DNA of 64,000 nucleotides from contig OZ287749.1 of the NCBI GenBank assembly GCA_965649765.1, positions 66,526,001-66,590,000 of the forward strand, read 5' to 3'. The translations under genes and the position numbers were made by a program. The stretch comes from Bispira polyomma (taxonomy: Eukaryota). The notes beneath the pieces are model-generated. The model was not told where the DNA came from and ran no database searches. It saw only the letters and a list, made by a program, of their open reading frames with translations. Of this stretch, positions 45,720 through 54,154 are shown one piece after another. Positions within the stretch are counted from its first letter, which is position 1. Each line of letters starts with the position of its first letter.

Positions 45720-46645
45720 GCTACCTTTTGTTCCCTGTAATTGTAATTAGACTTTTATAGCACTTAATCTCCCCTTAACGAAGGGGACTCTGAGGTGCAA
45801 CAGCACAAAAGACAGTAATCCAATTTCCAATATCAAGGGACAGAAAAGGGTCGAGCACCACAGAGCACGCCGGGGGATGATTGAGACTAAGGTGGGTATG
45901 CCTTAGTGTACAAGTGGGTTTTAAGCTGCTTTCTAAAACAGGCCAGTGAGGGGAAGCACGAATCACATCAGAAAGAGCATTCCAAACAATGGGAGCAGCA
46001 AAAGCAAAGCTGTGACCAAACTACTTAACTGACTTTTCAGTAGACGGGTGGAACTTTGGAACGACAAGGAAATTTCTACCACTCTGACTGCGTCTGGTAT
46101 TATAGGAACTACTGTAAGAGGAAAGATATAGGGCAAAATATCTTGGAAACCCAGTGTGAAGAAACTTATAAACAAGTGTAACTGTTTTAAACACTGAACG
46201 CTGTTCAACAGGGAGCCAATGCAATTTTTTAAGAACAGGAGTTATACTGGTGTATTGACTAGTATTTGACACAATTCTAGCTGCACTATTTTGAATGTAT
46301 TGTAATTTACGTAAATTAAACTTTGAGAGACTCCAGTAAAGTAAATTGCAGTAATCTAGTCTACTACTGACAAAGGCATTTGCCACAAGTATCGAAGCAT
46401 TATAAGTGAGAAACCGTCTGACAAAGTCTCGGAGTTGCACAAAATAACTTTTACAGACACTCTGAACATGTTTAGAGAAGGAAAAGTCAGAGTCAAACCA
46501 TACACCCAGGTTCTTAACAGAATCAGCTGGGCTGAAAGGACTACCCAAGATGTCAACTGTAAACCATGCTTTCAACTTATCCCTCTGTCGTTTTGAGCCA
46601 AAGATTATAAACTCAGTCTTGTCGGGATTAAGTTTGAGTTTACCA
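45720..46645 (-). mobile_element. L2-clade LINE 3' portion (second family, different 3' UTR)
   Basis: KLKLNPDKTEF, VKNLGVWFDSDFSF, SSRLDYCN, LQYIQNSAAR, ITPVLKKLHWLPV and WNAL. Confidence 0.92.
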
Positions 46646-47471
46646 GTTTAATTTCTAAGCAAGCAAAAAAAAAAATTACATCAAATCATTTTTGCAAAAA
46701 GTGCTGTGTAGCAACTACTACTGTGTAACAACATCTGGATTTACTTACAAAGGTAACACAAATATACAGTTCGTGATTAATCGATTCTCGATCGATTATG
46801 GATCCTGGATAATTGATTATTGTTTAGGTAAGTGACTTCCAGGTCTACAATTTACTGATTCAAACAAGCTCTACAACAACCATAACAGCATACTTTGCAC
46901 TGATTGGCTCGTTTCTGTCAGCTTTCCAGTAAAAGGTCTTGTATCATAAAAAAATAGAGTACTATTTCAAGCCTGGGAGATTTCCTGTTGTGGAGGAAAT
47001 TAGTGTTTAACCTGTTTCCTCATGGATTGACCTATAACATTAATGCTACTACTTTTTAATACCCAACAAATATAAGAAAAAGATTACCCAAACGGATACA
47101 TCCGCATGGAAATGACTGGACATAAAAGCTAACTTAATGCCCGGCTTCTAAGAAATTCGAACAACACAAATATCCTGCCTCGTTTTTGCAAATACATAAG
47201 CAATATAATAAAAACTGCTCATAAAAACCCCATAACCATAATGCTTCTTTAAAGATTTACACATCTAATATAATGCCACAATTAAACACAAGCCATGCTG
47301 GTATAAGATTCTTTAATAATATGTGAATACTATATAAGGGGAAGGATATTTCAACAGTTAAAATTATATTTATTAACTCACTAATGCTGTCCTTTAGTGC
47401 TGATTGGTCATCAGATCATAAGTGCAAATTTGGTTAATTTTATTGTAATTAGAATTTTTATAAATAAAAAT

Positions 47472-47641
47472 ACTTACCTCATCCTAACAAATGCTATAGT
47501 TGATGGCCGTCAACTAAACCACGGTCAAATAGCCGAAAAAAGCTATCATCCTACCTTAACCTGTGGTTCAGTGGTGTACTTGATAAGTCAATATCGACAT
47601 GGTCACATGGTATCGTTTGAATCCTCACAATGTTCTTTGAC
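47472..47641. repeat. Element 2 3' ITR (inverted copy of 51953-52121)
   Basis: 5 substitutions and 1 indel over ~170 bp. This repeat explains the near-identical spurious ORFs 47397-47696(+) and 51954-52154(-). Confidence 0.95.
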
Positions 47642-47690
47642 ATACTCCCCAGAAGATTCCAGAAGCGGGGAGGTGGGATGGGAGTCTTCC

Positions 47691-47826
47691 TGTTAGGACG
47701 AGGTAAGTATTTCTATTTATAAAAATTCTTATTACAATATTAATAATTTCTATTTATAAAAATTCTTATTACATAATTAACCAATTTTATTGCATAAAAT
47801 ACACTTACCTCGTCCCAACAAATGCT
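47691..47826. repeat. Element 2 ICR, with an internal ~37-bp-period duplication
   Basis: Complementary to both termini, with junction CAA at 47782-47784. The string atttctatttataaaaattcttattaca occurs twice. Confidence 0.9.
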
Positions 47827-50177
47827 GAATCCAACCGTATAGCTGGCTGGCTAAGAATCTTCTGAACCACTGAAGCACAGTAAGGTACAGGAAAATAAGA
47901 GGAAAATATCATCTATGAATAAATAGACAATGGAACCTATAAGCACATAGCTAATACCCATATGAATGACATGTATAAACATATATGAACATTTTCAGCA
48001 TAACATGACATAAGACAAAACTACTGAAAAGTTAGTATGAAAAATGCCAACATTTAACTTACCAAACAAAAATGAAGTTTTGATGGTATAAATGATAATA
48101 GTTCCAAACAATACCATCACCAAATAACAATAGAAACTAACTTAAAAATGTCCTGGAACTCCCGAGGAACAAGTTTAAGATAAAATGAGAGTAAAAGTCA
48201 AGAAACAAGCTCCCAAGGCTTGATAAAGAGGCATAACCCTTGAAAGACTAAACAAAAGTCCATAATCCTCACACCATGGGACTTCCCTTAAGAGATTTCC
48301 TGATCAAAAATCTGTAAGCATACAAATAGACTGATTCAAGAGCCTAAGAAACATCATTTGAATGATCCTGTTTCATAGAAGGCAAGAAAAAGATTTAAGA
48401 AACTGCTGTTAAGTCCTTAGTTGACTAGGCAAAACATAAGGATGCTCAAATCCTCAACTAAGGCATCCCTACAGGAGATATCCAAAAAGTTGGGAAGACC
48501 ACCTGTCAAAGAGAATCAGATCAAACAGAACGGAACTGAATGTCAGACAGAAAAAGAAGGTGAACAGTAACCCGAGACCAGTAAGATTGAGACTTGGGGA
48601 AAGAAGGAGTCCATGCCTGAATGTCATTCCTACTTTAGACCTAGTCATGAAGAAGGAAAAACGCTATGTAGGCTTATATCTGTGAAAACTACAAACATAA
48701 GCCCTAAACTTCCAAACTACTATCACCTTGAAAGCAGCTTTAAATCATTGTGTGAAACAAAATCTAAAATTTAGTCACACAGAAAATGCTAGGAAATCCA
48801 CCTCGTGAAATATTTCCAGAACATTTAAAATTGTGGTCTGAACTGGAACTACAACCCAAGGCTCATGTATTCCAGACAATTGTGGAATGTGTTGTTGAAT
48901 GACTAGTTCAACAAGCTGAGTAACCATGACAGTACTAGTGGAGACTTGAAGGAAAGATCTACTAAAACCCAGAATCATGGAATCCCTGGTCACCCTGAAG
49001 CCATGAAGAGCATGTGGCAAATGTGACAAGCTTGACTGAAAAGTACAGAGGAAGCTTGATCAGCTTGTTTGTGAATGTGCAGCCTATGGCCCCATTTGCA
49101 GGATGCAGTGAACACCTCTTAGTGGAGTGAACACTCTATGTGAACATTCTTGTACCTCCTGAAAGTGAGTGAACAAGAAAATCAGAATACTAGTAAGCTA
49201 GGAATGAGTGTGGCCGTATGTGGACCAAACCTTGGTGTTTTTACATGCCCTTACCCCAGTAGGGGCACATATTCCTAGAAAATCTGTGACTCCTATCCTG
49301 ATCTTGATCAGATATGACACTGTTGTGGTATTATCCGTATCAATAAAAACTAGCTTATTCTAAGCTTGTTCTTAAAAGACATCTCAGAGTCGAGAAACAG
49401 CTTCATTTCCAATAATGAAAATGTGCTTATGAGGAAATCCACAGAACACTTACACCAAGACTGTCCCTGTGGTTTCCCTAAAACCCCTCTGGGAAATCTT
49501 GGATCGCACATTGCGTTCTTCCTGGTAGAGTAGAAGCCGCAAAGATACTGGAAATTGTTTCACCATTCCAAAAGAAAGAACAAGATAGAATCAGAACGAA
49601 TCCCCGAATGAAGGGAAAAATGAGAATTCCATAACCATCAGAGATACCATTTGAAGGGCCTAAAGAGACTCCTTCACAAAGGTAATTCTCTCTTTATGGA
49701 AACCCAAATCAAAACTACTGATTCCATGGAATATGTTCTCACTTGTTTTATGCGGTATTGTCTGATGCCAGTAAAACCACTTTGTTCTGAACCTGAAGCT
49801 GGAAAATCTTCAGGTCCAGAACTCTCTAACAAATATATATGGAGATGAACCTCTTAGGGCTCCATAGACCACTTGTACTCAGGCCTTCTATGCGAGCTCC
49901 CCAATCCAGAATTCCCAGATTCCATTGGAAAAGGACCATATGAAAACCTTTCCATGAAACTGCTTCTGGACTGAAGTTGACGTCCCTGAAAGAAACACAA
50001 ACTTCTGTAACCTTTGACTGTAGGGGATGTAAACCTTCTGTACATGGCATTTTACTTTGGTTGGGTATACCAATCTGCTTAAGACGTAAAAATGGTAACC
50101 TGAAAATTAACAAAGAATGAAGATATTTTTAAAAATATCAACCATTCACCTTTGACAAGAGACTTTCAGATATGCTG

Positions 50178-50338
50178 TACTGTGCTGAAACCATTGAAGC
50201 TCGGGAAATTCCGAAAATTCCGAACTATGATTTATCACTGAACTGCCTAATACACTGATGTACTGTGCTTAGCTGAAACCATTGAAACTCGGGAAATTCC
50301 GAACTATGATCGATCACTGAACTGCCTAATACACTGAA
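50178..50338. repeat. ~80-bp tandem duplication inside element 2
   Basis: tgtactgtgct...gaaaccattgaa.ctcgggaaattccgaa...tcactgaactgcctaatacactga occurs twice. Confidence 0.85.
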
Positions 50339-51102
50339 ACTGGCGATATGTGGATTTACAGGGACGGCAGTTCCCATCAAAATACTAGAAAACGTTGAAT
50401 AAACACGAATGTCTAGGCAATAGATGTGTAGAAGAAGGAAAACTACTCTGAGATGAACTTAAGATGTTTTCCATACATGAAGAAATCGTCATCTAGTTGT
50501 ATAAACTTTCTTGTCCATCTTTTACAAAGTTCCGCATGAAGTGGAAACCCAGGAACCGAAACTCGACTGTCTGTCCTCCGCTTCCGCAAATTAAGTCGAA
50601 ACTAATCAACAACTTCCGCAAGAAGCAAGAACCAAAATGCAGTGCACTTCCGGAAGGAAGCAGCTATTCGTTTGGCACGTTCTACTCTGTAAATTGTCAA
50701 AAAGCTACAAAACCCCGAAAAATCGCGGAATCGGAAAGGCTGTAAAAGAACAACACAGGGTCTTTCCTGAAGGCAGCATGGTGTGGAACTGTGGATGCCT
50801 GTCTGTAAAAGGACAAGACAGGATCATTCCTCAAAACAGCATGATGTGGCACTGAAGAAGCTGTGGACCTGCAGTGGTATCCATGGAGTCATTGGCCTAT
50901 CATGGACTTCATGGACACTTCATGTAGTTGTGGCCCTTCCATGGACTCCATAGAGTTGTGAATCTGTTCTGTCCACCATGGAGTTATGGGCTGTCCTGGC
51001 GACTAAGGAGTGGTAGACCTGTTTAACCCTTGATAGCCCAAATTTCTGACCCACCATGGCCTCCTGCAACCTCATGGCTTCCAGCAAAACATGGCCTATG
51101 AT

Positions 51103-51460
51103 ATGTAGATTTAGCTTTGCTAGTTGGTTTTGAATGAGTGCCAGGCATATGAGCCTGCAAAACATCTCCACCACTAAATAAGCCATATGTAGCCTCTGCA
51201 GGACGTTTAGCCTTCCAGGGTGTTTAGCCTTGTGACATATAGATTTAGCATAGTTAGTTGGTTTTAAATGAGTGCCAGGCATATGAGCCTGCAAAACATC
51301 TTCACCACTAAACAAGCCATATGTAGACTCTACAGGACGTTTAGCCTTCCAGGGTGTTTAGCCTTGTGATATGTAGATTTAGCATTGTTAGCTGGCTTTG
51401 AATGAGTGCCAGGGATATGACCCTGCAAAATATCCCCACCATTAAACAAGCTATATGAGT
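51103..51460. repeat. 134-bp tandem repeat (~2.7 copies) inside element 2
   Basis: gagtgccagg recurs at 51136, 51270 and 51404 with conserved flanks. Confidence 0.9.
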
Positions 51461-51952
51461 AGTTTGCATGTAATTTCTGATTTTATATTCTGCAGCTTCA
51501 ACAAAAAAACAGGGACTAGGCCCAAAAATAGAAGATTTACCCTCTGCAAGGCGACTAGCCGAGTCCGCTTTCGACTCCGTTTGAAGGCGAAAAAACGCAA
51601 ACTTACTCTCTGTGATGAAGTGCTAGTGCTGTAGCGATTTATGAAGAAGACCTTAATCCGGGGCGTCCACAAAAACTCTACGTTAAGCCCAACCGAACGC
51701 TCCCGTCGTCGTTGCTAGGAAACACAGTAAATGTTAAAAAATGTCTATCGGCAGATACGAGATTGACTGGCCCCTCCGTTTTTGTTCACAAAAAAGCAAG
51801 TTATAAATTGAAAATTGCCCAAAATACTGCAAAACAGCTCTAAACAGCAATACTAGCACCTGTATAAAGCCATTATAACTTGCAAAGTAAAAACTTCGCA
51901 AAAAGAAAAAATAAATTGAAAACTTCAAAATGGCTGTGTACACACCTTGACG

Positions 51953-52121
51953 GTCAAAAACATTGTGAGGATTCAAATGATACCACGTGACCATGTTGAT
52001 ATTGACTTATCAAGTACACCACTGAACCACAGGTTAAGGTAGGATGATAGCTTTTTTCGGCTATTTGACCCTGGTTTAGTTGACGGCCATCAACTATAGC
52101 ATTTGTTAGGACGAGGTAAGT
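51953..52121. repeat. Element 2 5' ITR
   Basis: Reverse complement of 47472-47641, followed by the extension gttttttatgcaataaaaattg. Confidence 0.95.
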
Positions 52122-54154
52122 GTTTTTTATGCAATAAAAATTGAGGTGAAACAAGATGACAATGACGTACTCTATGTGTCTTAAAACCTGGGGCCATAAT
52201 TATCAAACATCTTTTAACTCATTGTCAATCTTATAGACTTAAATACGACATAGTACATTGTACATAGAATTTCTAGTAAATGGATAGAATCTCAACATGT
52301 CATTAATCATTTTATTAGCACTTTCTGCAGGGGAAATGAAAAAAATGGTTTAGTTTTTTTCAAAGATATTTTAATTTTTGTGGTAGGCAAAAATACACTG
52401 GGTCCTATTATTGTGAGTTTTTAGTTTAAGACCTTTAATAAATACAGCCTCTGGGTATTTTTTCAATACATTAGGTTAAATTAAATCTAAAAATTGGTCA
52501 GCCAATCCTATTTCAGTTTCAATTGGGTCAAGGTATGTAGAGATATTATAATTAATAATATACTCTATTTTGTGCTAATTTGGTAAAAGTCTGTACAGGT
52601 AGTAGTATACAGATAGGTAAAAAACCTAAATTAGGTTCTCTATTAGAGTTTAGTCAATTAACTGACAACACCAAAGTTTTTAGATGTTACAAATATCTGT
52701 CCACTATTTTTGGAATCTATACATTGTGTTACACTACACACTGAGTGCTCTAAGTGGTCGTTTCCTTCCACAGGAAGCAGAATCCATCCTGTCAAGTCAT
52801 GAGTTACTCTACTGGGCCAAATGCAAGTCAATCCAATCACGACAAGTATATTTGATAGTTTGTTGCAAAGGACTTTTTCTTGTTGATTACTGTCTGTTAA
52901 TACTGAACTAAAAGCAAAAGGCTGTACCATCCCTTTGATGACATCATATAGTAATCTGATTTTTACAAGTTTCAGGCTCTTTTATGGCTTTGTTCACATT
53001 GCACACGGTAAGCTGTGTTTGTGGGAAAGATTATCACATAATGTGCCTAATTTTTGAAAACAATCTGCAACAGATGTGTATTTTGATTTGAATCAAAATT
53101 TGGCTGAATAATCTTTGATCAAATGGAAAGTTTACATGATGCAAGATGTGATTATTGGACAACACCCAATGCTGTTTGAAAAGAACAATCCAGGAGCACT
53201 ACTTCTCTAAACTTCCTGTCAACACTCAAAGGGATGTACGATCGTGTCAAAAATACTTTCAAGAGCATGACATTATGTAGTCAATATTGCTAAATCTAGT
53301 CCTTTCCAATTTCCAGTCGAAGGGTTACAATGCTTTTACACATGCAAATCCCAATACAAACTTTAAAATAGGAATATTAGTTAATATGCAGTTCTGGTCT
53401 TTATAATAGATAATAGATGCTATACAGCCTTTAAAATCTTACACAAACGTGAATCTAAGCTTTAAACCATGTTTCTTTTTGAAAATCTGGGCACAGGTGT
53501 TAGGTTTATAAATGGGTTAAACATGAAAGAGCATTCAGTGGTCTCTGGCAGAAAAACCTGAACAGTGGAAACAGCAAATTGCAGCGATTCAAAGCATCCT
53601 ATTACAACAATCCAACAGTAAAACTCCATCTTCTTTTTTAAAGGATGGAACCCGATGAGATACAAAACAAAATTCTAGCATTATTTGTTGTTTAATGCAA
53701 AGTTTCATTTGATTTAGTAAATTGGACATTACTGCTGAGAAAACTTAGATTTAACGTAGGCTACAAAAGAAAACACATAGTAAGTAATCCCGACTGAACC
53801 AGCTGTCTGACCACAATCTTTAAGTACAGTTTAAAAATTCATTAGATTACGTCACCTAGCAATTATTGCACTGATGGATTAACACGGTAGACCAACACTG
53901 ATTGCTTTCGTTGCTCTGCCTTATTCAAAGACAGAGGCTCTATGGTGTGTGTTTTGTTAAGGGTTTATTTGCTTTGTCTTGCAAGTCTTTATTTCACAAA
54001 AAAAGGCAAAAAGACAATGACTTTATAACCTCAAAGTTCAACAGAATAACATGAGAGTACGCTAAAGTTGATCCTTAATGCCAACATTGAGTCAACAAAT
54101 TTATTTGGCATTATACTAAGGGCTTGACTTTGCCTTGCAGGTTTTGAAATAATA

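What the first reader, a model, noticed from the sequence alone, without database searches (positions are those of the whole stretch)
47430..52143. 'Ghost' DIRS: young terminal architecture around a long-dead coding interior (candidate non-autonomous YR retrotransposon)
Seen: the ITRs differ by only 5 substitutions (4 are CpG transitions) and 1 indel in ~170 bp, and the ICR still matches both ends. The 4.1-kb interior has no recognisable ORF. Only scraps survive, in the right order: FRPFKWYL vs MRPFQWFL, LVFIDTDNTTTVSYLIK vs LVLISSDNSTVVSYLNK, and IECSLH*EVF vs TEWSLHPQVF. There are about 3 stops and 2 frameshifts in ~50 RNase H codons. Inference: that decay far exceeds the ITR divergence, so the element kept transposing in trans after losing its genes. 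It would be a DIRS analogue of the LARDs seen among LTR elements. The ORF track misses it entirely.
Basis: partly seen in the sequence, partly recalled or inferred. Interest (0 to 1): 0.8.

Follow-up and report, generated by a model that had tools for sequence, protein, structure and literature searches.

The report
Non-autonomous DIRS retrotransposon family copy
This 4.7-kb stretch is one ordinary, slightly damaged copy of a family of at least about 350 jumping elements that lost their own genes before they spread, so they were probably copied by enzymes borrowed from intact relatives, a lifestyle rarely documented for this class of element.

Summary
Window 47430-52139 is a DIRS1-type element on the minus strand. 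It has 172-nt inverted terminal repeats (ITRs, 96% complementary), an internal complementary region (ICR) matching both ends, and no real ORF. RT-RH-MT-YR scraps lie in the expected order.

The core interpretation also holds, though not because the ends are "young".
- 20 other full-length copies sit at unrelated loci, with sharp ends and no target duplication.
- 8 of the ghost's 9 in-frame stops are shared by 15-20 of those 20 copies.
- No copy has a detectable gag or RT core. All carry a duplicated RT-tail/RNase H module and tandem arrays.
- The copies form nested, well-supported subfamilies, and shared substitutions show no codon-position bias.
- ICR and right-terminus variants co-vary (16 concordant, 0 discordant), so ICR-templated replication went on after the genes were dead.

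This copy is not special. Its ITR divergence (3.1%) is about the family mean (2.8%) and matches its private interior divergence (2.0%). Its two large deletions and its ICR duplication are private.

No helper was identified. The genome holds many open DIRS pol frames, and a neighbouring family shares the junction core ATAAAA|TTG.

An earlier scan note (s1-585878) flagged a non-autonomous DIRS elsewhere in this genome.

The parts
47430..47465 (-). Outer terminal extension. This is the element's 3' end in sense orientation and starts TTGGTTAATT. It is not part of the ITR core and is templated by ICR part A.
   Evidence: Homology among 21 copies begins exactly here. It pairs with 47691-47746 (repeat I2).
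47466..47637 (-). ITR arm (3' ITR in sense orientation)
   Evidence: 172 nt, 96% complementary to 51956-52127. 2 private changes in 158 scored columns.
47638..47690 (-). Spacer between ITR and ICR. It carries the motif GGGAGTCTTCCTGTTAGGA, which also occurs next to the ICR of the neighbouring DIRS family.
   Evidence: Sequences printed.
47691..47826 (-). Internal complementary region: reverse complement of the left end followed by reverse complement of the right end. This copy has a private 37-bp tandem duplication at 47704-47777.
   Evidence: (I2, I3, D2). The junction motif occurs 355 times in the genome against 3 for the control.
48126..48332 (-). Tyrosine recombinase remnant. It is shortened by a private deletion of about 390 bp after 48200, between direct repeats.
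   Evidence: tblastn YR residues 151-226; YR 40-233 in L041, E 2e-6. Deletion.
48858..49019 (-). Methyltransferase-region remnant, the best-preserved scrap. It has 3 in-frame stops, 2 of them shared by 20 of 20 copies and 1 private.
   Evidence: 44% identity to residues 212-265 of the neighbour's RH/MT ORF. Stops.
49258..49425 (-). RNase H remnant, copy B (LVFIDTDNTTTVSYLIK). Its 3 in-frame stops are shared by 18-20 of 20 copies.
49599..49721 (-). RT C-terminal remnant (FRPFKWYL). Its 2 in-frame stops are shared by 15 and 19 of 20 copies.
49704..49903 (-). RNase H remnant, copy A. It is the upstream half of a duplicated RT-tail/RNase H module found in all copies.
   Evidence: RH residues 20-100 are covered in 20-21 copies and hit twice per copy.
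49909..50106 (-). Second, weaker RT C-terminal-like remnant upstream of RNase H copy A
   Evidence: E 0.07; the same place in L041 and L047.
50169..50337 (.). Internal direct repeats with 79-88 bp spacing
   Evidence: D4, D5.
50363..50485 (-). Very weak remnant of the pol N-terminus. The RT catalytic core that should follow it is not detectable.
   Evidence: consistent collinear weak hits across copies. RT residues 1-220 are covered in 0 of 21 copies and 221-260 in at most 3.
50740..50861 (.). Last two units of a 62-63-bp tandem array. About 9-10 units are present in full members. This copy lacks about 880 bp just before it (after 50730-50735), a private deletion.
   Evidence: (D3).
51099..51500 (.). 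134-bp tandem array (2.7-3 units) in the stretch where gag would be expected
   Evidence: (D1).
51501..51955 (-). 5' leader-like non-coding region
   Evidence: Conserved across copies at 90-96% identity. No Pfam match for its ORFs.
51956..52127 (-). ITR arm (5' ITR in sense orientation)
   Evidence: 3 private changes in 158 scored columns.
52128..52139 (-). Outer terminal extension, the element's 5' end, ending ...GCAATAAAA. It is templated by ICR part B.
   Evidence: Family-wide boundary. It pairs with 47785-47826 (repeat I3). It co-varies with the ICR across copies.

Best explanation
Window 47430-52139 is one insertion of a non-autonomous DIRS1-type retrotransposon family. Full members are about 6 kb long.

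The family's founder had already lost coding capacity. Its gag region was replaced or overwritten by 63-bp and 134-bp tandem arrays. Its RT core was lost. An RT-tail/RNase H module was duplicated, and many stops were fixed. The cis-acting parts stayed intact: ITR arms that are identical in the family-wide state, and an ICR exactly complementary to both outer ends.

Inferred mechanism: its transcripts were reverse-transcribed, their ends rebuilt on the ICR template, and the product integrated by a tyrosine recombinase. All of these proteins were supplied in trans by autonomous DIRS elements of the same genome.

The family diversified into nested subfamilies while non-coding. After insertion, this copy decayed neutrally by about 2%, mostly at CpGs. 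It also suffered two private deletions and a private ICR duplication, so it is a dead copy of a gene-less family.

Shown here: multi-copy dispersal, shared lesions, absence of coding constraint, and ICR/terminus co-variation. Inferred: supply of proteins in trans, and the identity of the helper.
For: - **Independent insertions.** The flanks of the 21 copies are unrelated. Homology starts and stops at the same bases, and there is no target duplication.
- **Copy number.** The 22-nt ICR junction motif occurs 355 times against 3 for the reversed control. Two short interior queries gave 520 and 534 first-look candidates.
- **Shared lesions.** 197 stop triplets on the coding strand are shared by at least 80% of copies. 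Outside the tandem arrays, no stretch longer than 387 nt is open family-wide. 8 of the ghost's 9 in-frame stops are present in 15-20 of 20 copies. gag and the RT core are detected in 0 of 21 copies, while RH, MT and YR are detected in most. The duplicated RTc-RH module is present in all copies examined.
- **Uniform age within this copy.** Private divergence is 5/316 (1.6%) in the ITR arms and 45/2232 (2.0%) in the pol remnant. The terminal branch length is 0.0245.
- **Diversification while dead.** There are nested clades with 100% support and internal branches up to 2.2%. Some stops arose on internal branches, for example the stop aligned to RT residue 293, which is absent from the L045/L047/L048/L049 group. 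Informative substitutions fall 37/43/35 over codon positions, p = 0.66.
- **Constraint on cis parts only.** Informative sites are about half as frequent in ITR+ICR as in the interior (odds ratio 0.54, p = 0.0025). Singleton sites are equally frequent.
- **ICR templating after gene loss.** The two right-terminus types differ by an indel plus substitutions. Each is matched by the same type in that copy's ICR: 13 + 3 copies concordant, 0 discordant. Both types carry the shared stops.
- **Related lineages are also closed.** The 150 best relatives of an RH-region piece, down to 60% identity, all have open frames of at most 273 aa. Many share one stop pattern.
- **Possible helpers exist.** There are 15,187 first-look candidates for a DIRS RT, with open frames up to 1166 aa. 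The neighbouring family shares the junction core ATAAAA|TTG. Its ITR aligns to the ghost family's ITR with score 155, against 78 +/- 9 for shuffles.
- **Published support.** The ICR is essential for DIRS-1 retrotransposition, and the DIRS-1 RT acts in trans (PMC7192593).
Against: - No autonomous partner with the same ITR/ICR was found.
- Only 21 full copies were read. They were chosen as the best matches to the ghost, so an intact member could exist among the unsampled copies.
- The sampled copies are 1-6% from their nodes, so the family may no longer be active.
- The codon-position test rests on 115 informative sites.
- The ICR/terminus co-variation rests on three type-2 copies that are partly related.
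Confidence: 0.8

Rival explanations
1. This is an ordinary old autonomous DIRS family. Each copy was intact on insertion and decayed on its own. The ITR similarity of this copy reflects local gene conversion.
For: Every copy is 1-6% from its nearest node. That is enough to break a 4-kb ORF by private mutation alone.
Against: 8 of 9 stops are shared, and 197 stop triplets are shared family-wide. The RT core and gag are missing in all 21 copies. All five ITR L/R differences in this copy are private, and ITR divergence equals interior private divergence. So no conversion is needed to explain the ITR similarity.
Confidence: 0.03
2. The copies spread by DNA-level duplication (segmental duplication or recombination), not by retrotransposition.
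For: None specific. The same genome does contain a tandem array with a period of about 36 kb that carries another DIRS copy.
Against: The flanks are unrelated and the termini are base-exact on eleven different chromosomes. 39 of 51 ITR L/R differences are private to one copy, so each copy began with matching arms. The ICR and the right terminus co-vary.
Confidence: 0.02
3. The family is semi-autonomous. It still makes a short product from a retained frame, for example the 148-154-aa frame over RNase H copy A that is open in dozens of copies. It needs a helper only for RT.
For:: many loci keep a 148-aa or 154-aa frame with no stop.
Against: At about 2-3% private divergence, most copies would keep a 150-codon frame open by chance. 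The frame runs out of the RNase H reading into an off-frame reading of the RT tail. It has no Pfam match. There is no codon-position bias.
Confidence: 0.05
4. An intact sibling with the same ITR/ICR exists but was not sampled. It is both the source of the proteins and the recurrent parent of the dead lineages.
For: Sampling was limited to the best-scoring candidates.
Against: None of the 150 best RH-region relatives has an open frame above 273 aa. The lesions are ancestral to all 21 sampled copies.
Confidence: 0.1

Closest known systems
DIRS1-like retrotransposons (DIRS order), as outlined by Piednoel et al. 2011 (PMC3266345). The replication model is from Cappello et al. 1985, tested by Malicki et al. 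2020 (PMC7192593).
   Same: ITRs, an ICR made of the complements of both outer ends, and gene-remnant order RT-RH-MT-YR followed by ICR and ITR. There is no target-site duplication, and the ITR arms are identical in the family-wide state.
   Different: No gag and no RT core in any copy read. The RTc/RNase H module is duplicated. Tandem arrays sit in the 5' third. Stops are fixed in all frames.
TOC1 of Chlamydomonas, called a non-autonomous DIRS retrotransposon (PMC9940879)
   Same: A DIRS-order element without its own coding capacity that has nevertheless been mobile.
   Different: From my own knowledge, TOC1 belongs to the PAT-like group with split direct repeats, not ITR plus ICR, and it is from a green alga. 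It was not compared here at sequence level.
SIRE, the truncated non-autonomous derivative of VIPER in Trypanosoma cruzi (PMC6681497)
   Same: A gene-less derivative of a tyrosine-recombinase retroelement that keeps the parent's terminal parts.
   Different: SIRE is a short element of about 435 bp made of end pieces, and whether it is mobile is itself debated. The family here keeps a near full-length, decayed interior.
LARD and TRIM derivatives of LTR retrotransposons, such as the Dasheng/RIRE2 pair
   Same: A large non-coding interior between functional terminal repeats, amplified by a partner's proteins.
   Different: Those have direct LTRs and integrase-made target duplications. This family has ITR/ICR and recombinase-type insertion without duplication.
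The neighbouring DIRS element at window 32337-37706
   Same: Same architecture and orientation. Same circle-junction core ATAAAA|TTG. The ITRs are alignable (score 155 against 78 +/- 9 for shuffles). A shared motif lies beside the ICR.
   Different: It has recognisable gag, RT (RVT_1, E 4e-21), RH and YR ORFs and 99% identical ITRs. Proteins are only 30-45% identical to the ghost family's scraps. There is no nucleotide match.

Membership tests
DIRS1-like retrotransposon (structure) | Inverted terminal repeats | tested here: met
   172 nt, 96% complementary. The arms are identical in the family-wide state.
DIRS1-like retrotransposon (structure) | Internal complementary region matching both outer ends, placed just inside the 3' ITR | tested here: met
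   (I2, I3); one search shows the same in 18 or more copies.
DIRS1-like retrotransposon (structure) | Tyrosine recombinase, RT, RNase H and methyltransferase coding regions | tested here: inconclusive
   YR, MT, RH and RT-tail remnants are collinear and detected only on the sense strand: 141 hits on the minus strand against 0 on the plus strand. The RT core and gag are not detectable, and nothing is intact.
DIRS1-like retrotransposon (structure) | Insertion without target-site duplication | tested here: met
   18 left and 18 right flanks show no duplication. The left flank has A at -2 in 17 of 18 copies and A at -3 in 15 of 18.
DIRS1-like retrotransposon (structure) | A 3-bp circular-junction overlap that flanks the element on both sides | tested here: inconclusive
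   The junction ATAAAA|TTGG is defined by the ICR. TTG directly follows the right end in only 1 of 18 copies, and in the ghost only after an extra A.
Non-autonomous retrotransposon mobilised in trans | Many dispersed copies with unrelated flanks | tested here: met
Non-autonomous retrotransposon mobilised in trans | Disabling lesions ancestral to the copies | tested here: met
Non-autonomous retrotransposon mobilised in trans | Continued replication after loss of coding capacity | tested here: met
   Nested subfamilies. No codon-position bias. ICR/terminus co-variation.
Non-autonomous retrotransposon mobilised in trans | An identified autonomous partner with matching cis sequences | tested here: not met
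   None found among 21 copies and the 150 best RH-region relatives. There is only a family with the same 9-nt junction core and a distantly similar ITR.
Non-autonomous retrotransposon mobilised in trans | Transcripts, or new or polymorphic insertions | not testable with these tools
LARD (large retrotransposon derivative) | Direct long terminal repeats with a primer-binding site and polypurine tract | tested here: not met
   The terminal repeats are inverted and an ICR is present. This is an analogue, not a member.
TOC1 / PAT-like non-autonomous DIRS | Split direct repeats | tested here: not met
   No split direct repeats were found. The architecture is ITR plus ICR.

The most novel reading that the evidence does not exclude
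This would be a large family (at least about 350 ICR-bearing copies, several subfamilies) of gene-less ITR/ICR-type DIRS elements in an animal genome that replicated for a long period purely as a parasite of autonomous DIRS elements.

Its conserved parts (ITR arms, outer extensions, ICR and an ICR-adjacent motif) would then be a natural map of the minimal cis requirements for DIRS retrotransposition.

The ICR/terminus co-variation would be natural-history evidence for the Cappello end-templating model.
Probability: 0.6. Interest if true: 0.55.

Novelty: new variant of a known kind. Interest (0 to 1): 0.45.

Why it matters
Non-autonomous derivatives are textbook for LTR, LINE and DNA transposons. 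For tyrosine-recombinase retrotransposons they are barely documented. In the open-access library searched, the phrase "non-autonomous DIRS" (with its spelling variants) appears only for TOC1 of Chlamydomonas, and the mobility of SIRE is still debated.

A well-supported gene-less ITR/ICR family has three uses.
- Annotation pipelines that require RT, MT and YR domains, such as the screen in PMC3266345, miss part of the DIRS load of a genome.
- It supports trans-action of the whole DIRS protein set, not only the RT, which is what has been tested in Dictyostelium.
- It points to which non-coding sequences the machinery needs.

This single copy has no special significance.

Tried and rejected
- **Ghost sub-lineage moving after its deletions: rejected.** No other copy spans the 50735 junction. 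L033's deletion at the 48200 site has a different breakpoint inside the same direct repeat, and no other copy matches the ghost junction above 89%. Both deletions are private.
- **"Young" ITRs or ITR gene conversion: rejected**.
- **TTG as a flanking crossover trinucleotide: not general**. Only the junction core is shared between the two families.
- **Hidden domains or RNAs:** no Pfam match for eight ghost ORFs or for the 184-aa ORF at 46021-46575. No Rfam family and no tRNA.
- **Helper search:**
  - The DNA search returned only gene-less members.
  - The RH-piece protein search returned only closed frames. The two stop-free hits, C1:82630401-82630859 and C14:17917292-17917750, have the same 154-aa frame limits, so they are not intact.
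  - None of the C1 places listed in the top RT hits lies inside an element with the ghost-type ICR (compared by eye).
- **One Pfam call failed on a mistyped frame** and was repeated without that entry.
- **The large protein searches were not used.** No claim here rests on absence from protein databases.
Full report
**What is in the window**

Window 47430-52139 has two inverted arms, 47466-47637 and 51956-52127 (172 nt, 96% complementary). A 136-nt block at 47691-47826 pairs in its first part with the left outer end and in its second part with the right outer end. Read as its reverse complement, that block gives right end ...ATGCAATAAAA joined to left end TTGGTTAATT... It is the ITR/ICR layout of DIRS1-type retrotransposons as described in PMC3266345. 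The ICR lies at the window-left side, so the element's sense strand is the minus strand.

No ORF exceeds 145 aa, and the longest lie in a tandem array. A second DIRS element at 32337-37706 has the same orientation, 99% identical ITRs, and recognisable gag, RT, RH/MT and YR ORFs.

tblastn with that element's proteins finds weak, collinear remnants on the minus strand only. In order they are: pol N-terminus, RT tail, RNase H copy A, RT tail, RNase H copy B, methyltransferase region, tyrosine recombinase. The three quoted scraps are present.

**Is it single-copy?**

It is not. A search of the window's own genome (1.035 Gb, a eukaryote; the window is C2:66526001-66590000) gave 1344 first-look candidates. 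The 25 candidates scored gave about two dozen full-length copies on many chromosomes, 86-93% identical to the ghost.

I fetched 20 of them and aligned them with the ghost.
- The flanks are unrelated (about 36-44% identity in a forced alignment).
- Homology begins at TTGGTTAATT and ends at GCAATAAAA in every copy with intact ends.
- There is no target duplication.
- The left flank has A at -2 in 17 of 18 copies and at -3 in 15 of 18.

The 22-nt ICR junction motif occurs 355 times in the genome, against 3 for the reversed control. Full members are about 6 kb long.

The ghost is shorter because of two deletions: about 390 bp after 48200, between direct repeats, and about 880 bp after 50730-50735, inside a 63-bp array. 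Both are private to this copy. So is a 37-bp tandem duplication inside its ICR.

**Are the lesions shared or private?**

They are mostly shared.
- None of the 20 copies has a pol-sized ORF. The longer open stretches lie in the 62-63-bp and 134-bp tandem arrays and are open in several frames.
- On the sense strand, 197 stop triplets are present in at least 80% of copies. Outside the arrays, the longest family-wide open stretch is 387 nt.
- In the frames defined by homology, 8 of the ghost's 9 in-frame stops are present in 15-20 of the 20 other copies. Only the stop at 48975-48977 is private.
- Across all 21 copies, the RT tail, RNase H, methyltransferase region and recombinase are detected. gag and the RT core (the part that matches Pfam RVT_1 in the neighbour) are detected in none.
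- The strand control gave 141 hits on the minus strand and 0 on the plus strand.
- Looser settings add only a faint, consistently placed pol N-terminal trace. The space left for the RT core is too short: about 270 bp against about 570 bp in the neighbour.
- The RT-tail/RNase H module is present twice in every copy examined.

The common ancestor of these copies therefore could not encode its own proteins.

**Are the termini younger than the interior?**

They are not. All five ITR left/right differences in the ghost are private to it, because the other copies have the same base on both arms at those columns. Four are CpG transitions.

The ghost's private divergence is 5/316 (1.6%) in the ITR arms and 45/2232 (2.0%) in the pol remnant. 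Its terminal branch in a maximum-likelihood tree of the interior is 0.0245.

ITR left/right divergence across 15 copies ranges from 1.2% to 7.5%, with a mean of 2.8%. The ghost, at 3.1%, is ordinary. 39 of 51 such differences are private to one copy. So each copy started with matching arms, as expected if one arm is rebuilt from the other in each cycle (model summarised in PMC7192593).

The ends and interior of this copy are the same age, and the ruin was inherited.

**Did the family go on replicating while gene-less?**

Four results say yes.
- The tree has nested clades with 100% support and internal branches up to 2.2%. Some stops map to internal branches. For example, the stop aligned to RT residue 293 is missing from a four-copy group.
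- Substitutions shared by two or more copies fall evenly over codon positions (37/43/35, p = 0.66). This shows no protein-level constraint during diversification.
- Shared substitutions are about half as frequent in the ITRs and ICR as in the interior (odds ratio 0.54, p = 0.0025). Singletons are equally frequent. Only the cis parts were constrained in the source lineages.
- The right outer end exists in two types that differ by an indel and substitutions. Each copy's ICR carries the same type as its right end: 13 type-1 and 3 type-2 copies, none discordant. Both types carry the shared stops. So at least one ICR-templated replication cycle happened after the genes were dead.

A protein search with an RH-region piece gave 4311 candidates. 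All 150 scored matches, down to 60% identity, have open frames of at most 273 aa. Dozens share one stop pattern, which suggests further gene-less subfamilies.

**Mechanism and helper**

The inferred steps are:
1. Transcription from the 5' ITR.
2. Reverse transcription by a foreign DIRS RT.
3. End repair on the element's own ICR.
4. Integration by a foreign tyrosine recombinase.

This is inferred, not shown. It is plausible for two reasons. The ICR is experimentally essential for DIRS-1, and the DIRS-1 RT acts in trans, probably along with the other DIRS-1 proteins (PMC7192593). The genome also holds very many DIRS RT loci (15,187 candidates), with open frames up to 1166 aa.

I could not identify the helper. 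The neighbouring family shares the 9-nt junction core ATAAAA|TTG, a motif beside the ICR, and a distantly alignable ITR (score 155 against 78 +/- 9 for shuffles). That makes it, or a relative, a candidate only.

There is therefore no evidence on expression, circles or insertion polymorphism.

**Comparison with known elements and novelty**

Structurally this is a DIRS1-type element. It fails membership as an autonomous one because it has no RT core, no gag and no intact ORF.

It works like a LARD but is not one, because it has inverted repeats, an ICR and no target duplication. Gene-less relatives in the DIRS order are known:
- TOC1 of Chlamydomonas (PMC9940879).
- SIRE, derived from VIPER, whose mobility is still discussed (PMC6681497).

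Many Xenopus DIRS family consensus sequences in Repbase are reported as degenerate (PMC9210276). Surveys that demand RT, MT and YR domains skip such elements by design (PMC3266345).

I found no description of a large gene-less ITR/ICR family with evidence of replication after gene loss. I therefore rate this a new variant of a known kind, of moderate interest to transposon specialists.

I could not check whether it is the same family.

**Method limits**

Majority states were used only column by column, to count private differences.

Noticed in passing
window 32337-37706: A near-intact DIRS element with 186-nt ITRs at 99% identity. Its pol is broken in this copy: there is a frameshift between the 148-aa and 318-aa RT ORFs and an in-frame stop before RH. 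A 595-aa ORF (34086-35873) runs in a third frame over RT/RH and ends with the recombinase N-terminal W..F..WC motif.
   Followed up: partly
genome C4:65376892-65620111 (outside the window): Eight or more near-identical DIRS RT matches lie about 26-41 kb apart (mostly about 36 kb), with the same stop. This looks like a tandem segmental array carrying one DIRS copy.
   Followed up: no
left flanks of L031-L050 and window 47427-47429: There is a strong base bias just outside the left end: A at -2 in 17 of 18 copies and A at -3 in 15 of 18. The neighbouring DIRS family also has AAC there. This may be a target preference or part of the crossover site.
   Followed up: partly
L035 (C4:7842016-7848829): In this copy the left outer end carries right-end-type extension sequence, and the ICR lacks the left-end complement. 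It is a rearranged terminal variant.
   Followed up: no
L034 (C9:8987497-8993586): The interior groups with type-1 copies, but the ICR and right end are type 2. This may be a recombinant between subfamilies, for example by template switching.
   Followed up: no
window 47638-47700 and 32600-32630: A G-rich motif, GGGAG(GGAC)TCTTCCT(T)GTTAGGA, lies just before the ICR in both DIRS families of the window.
   Followed up: no
genome C2:66606658 (16.7 kb beyond the window end): Another ICR junction of the same family lies close to the window.
   Followed up: no
window 46021-46575 (minus strand): A 184-aa ORF just upstream of the element has no Pfam match.
   Followed up: partly
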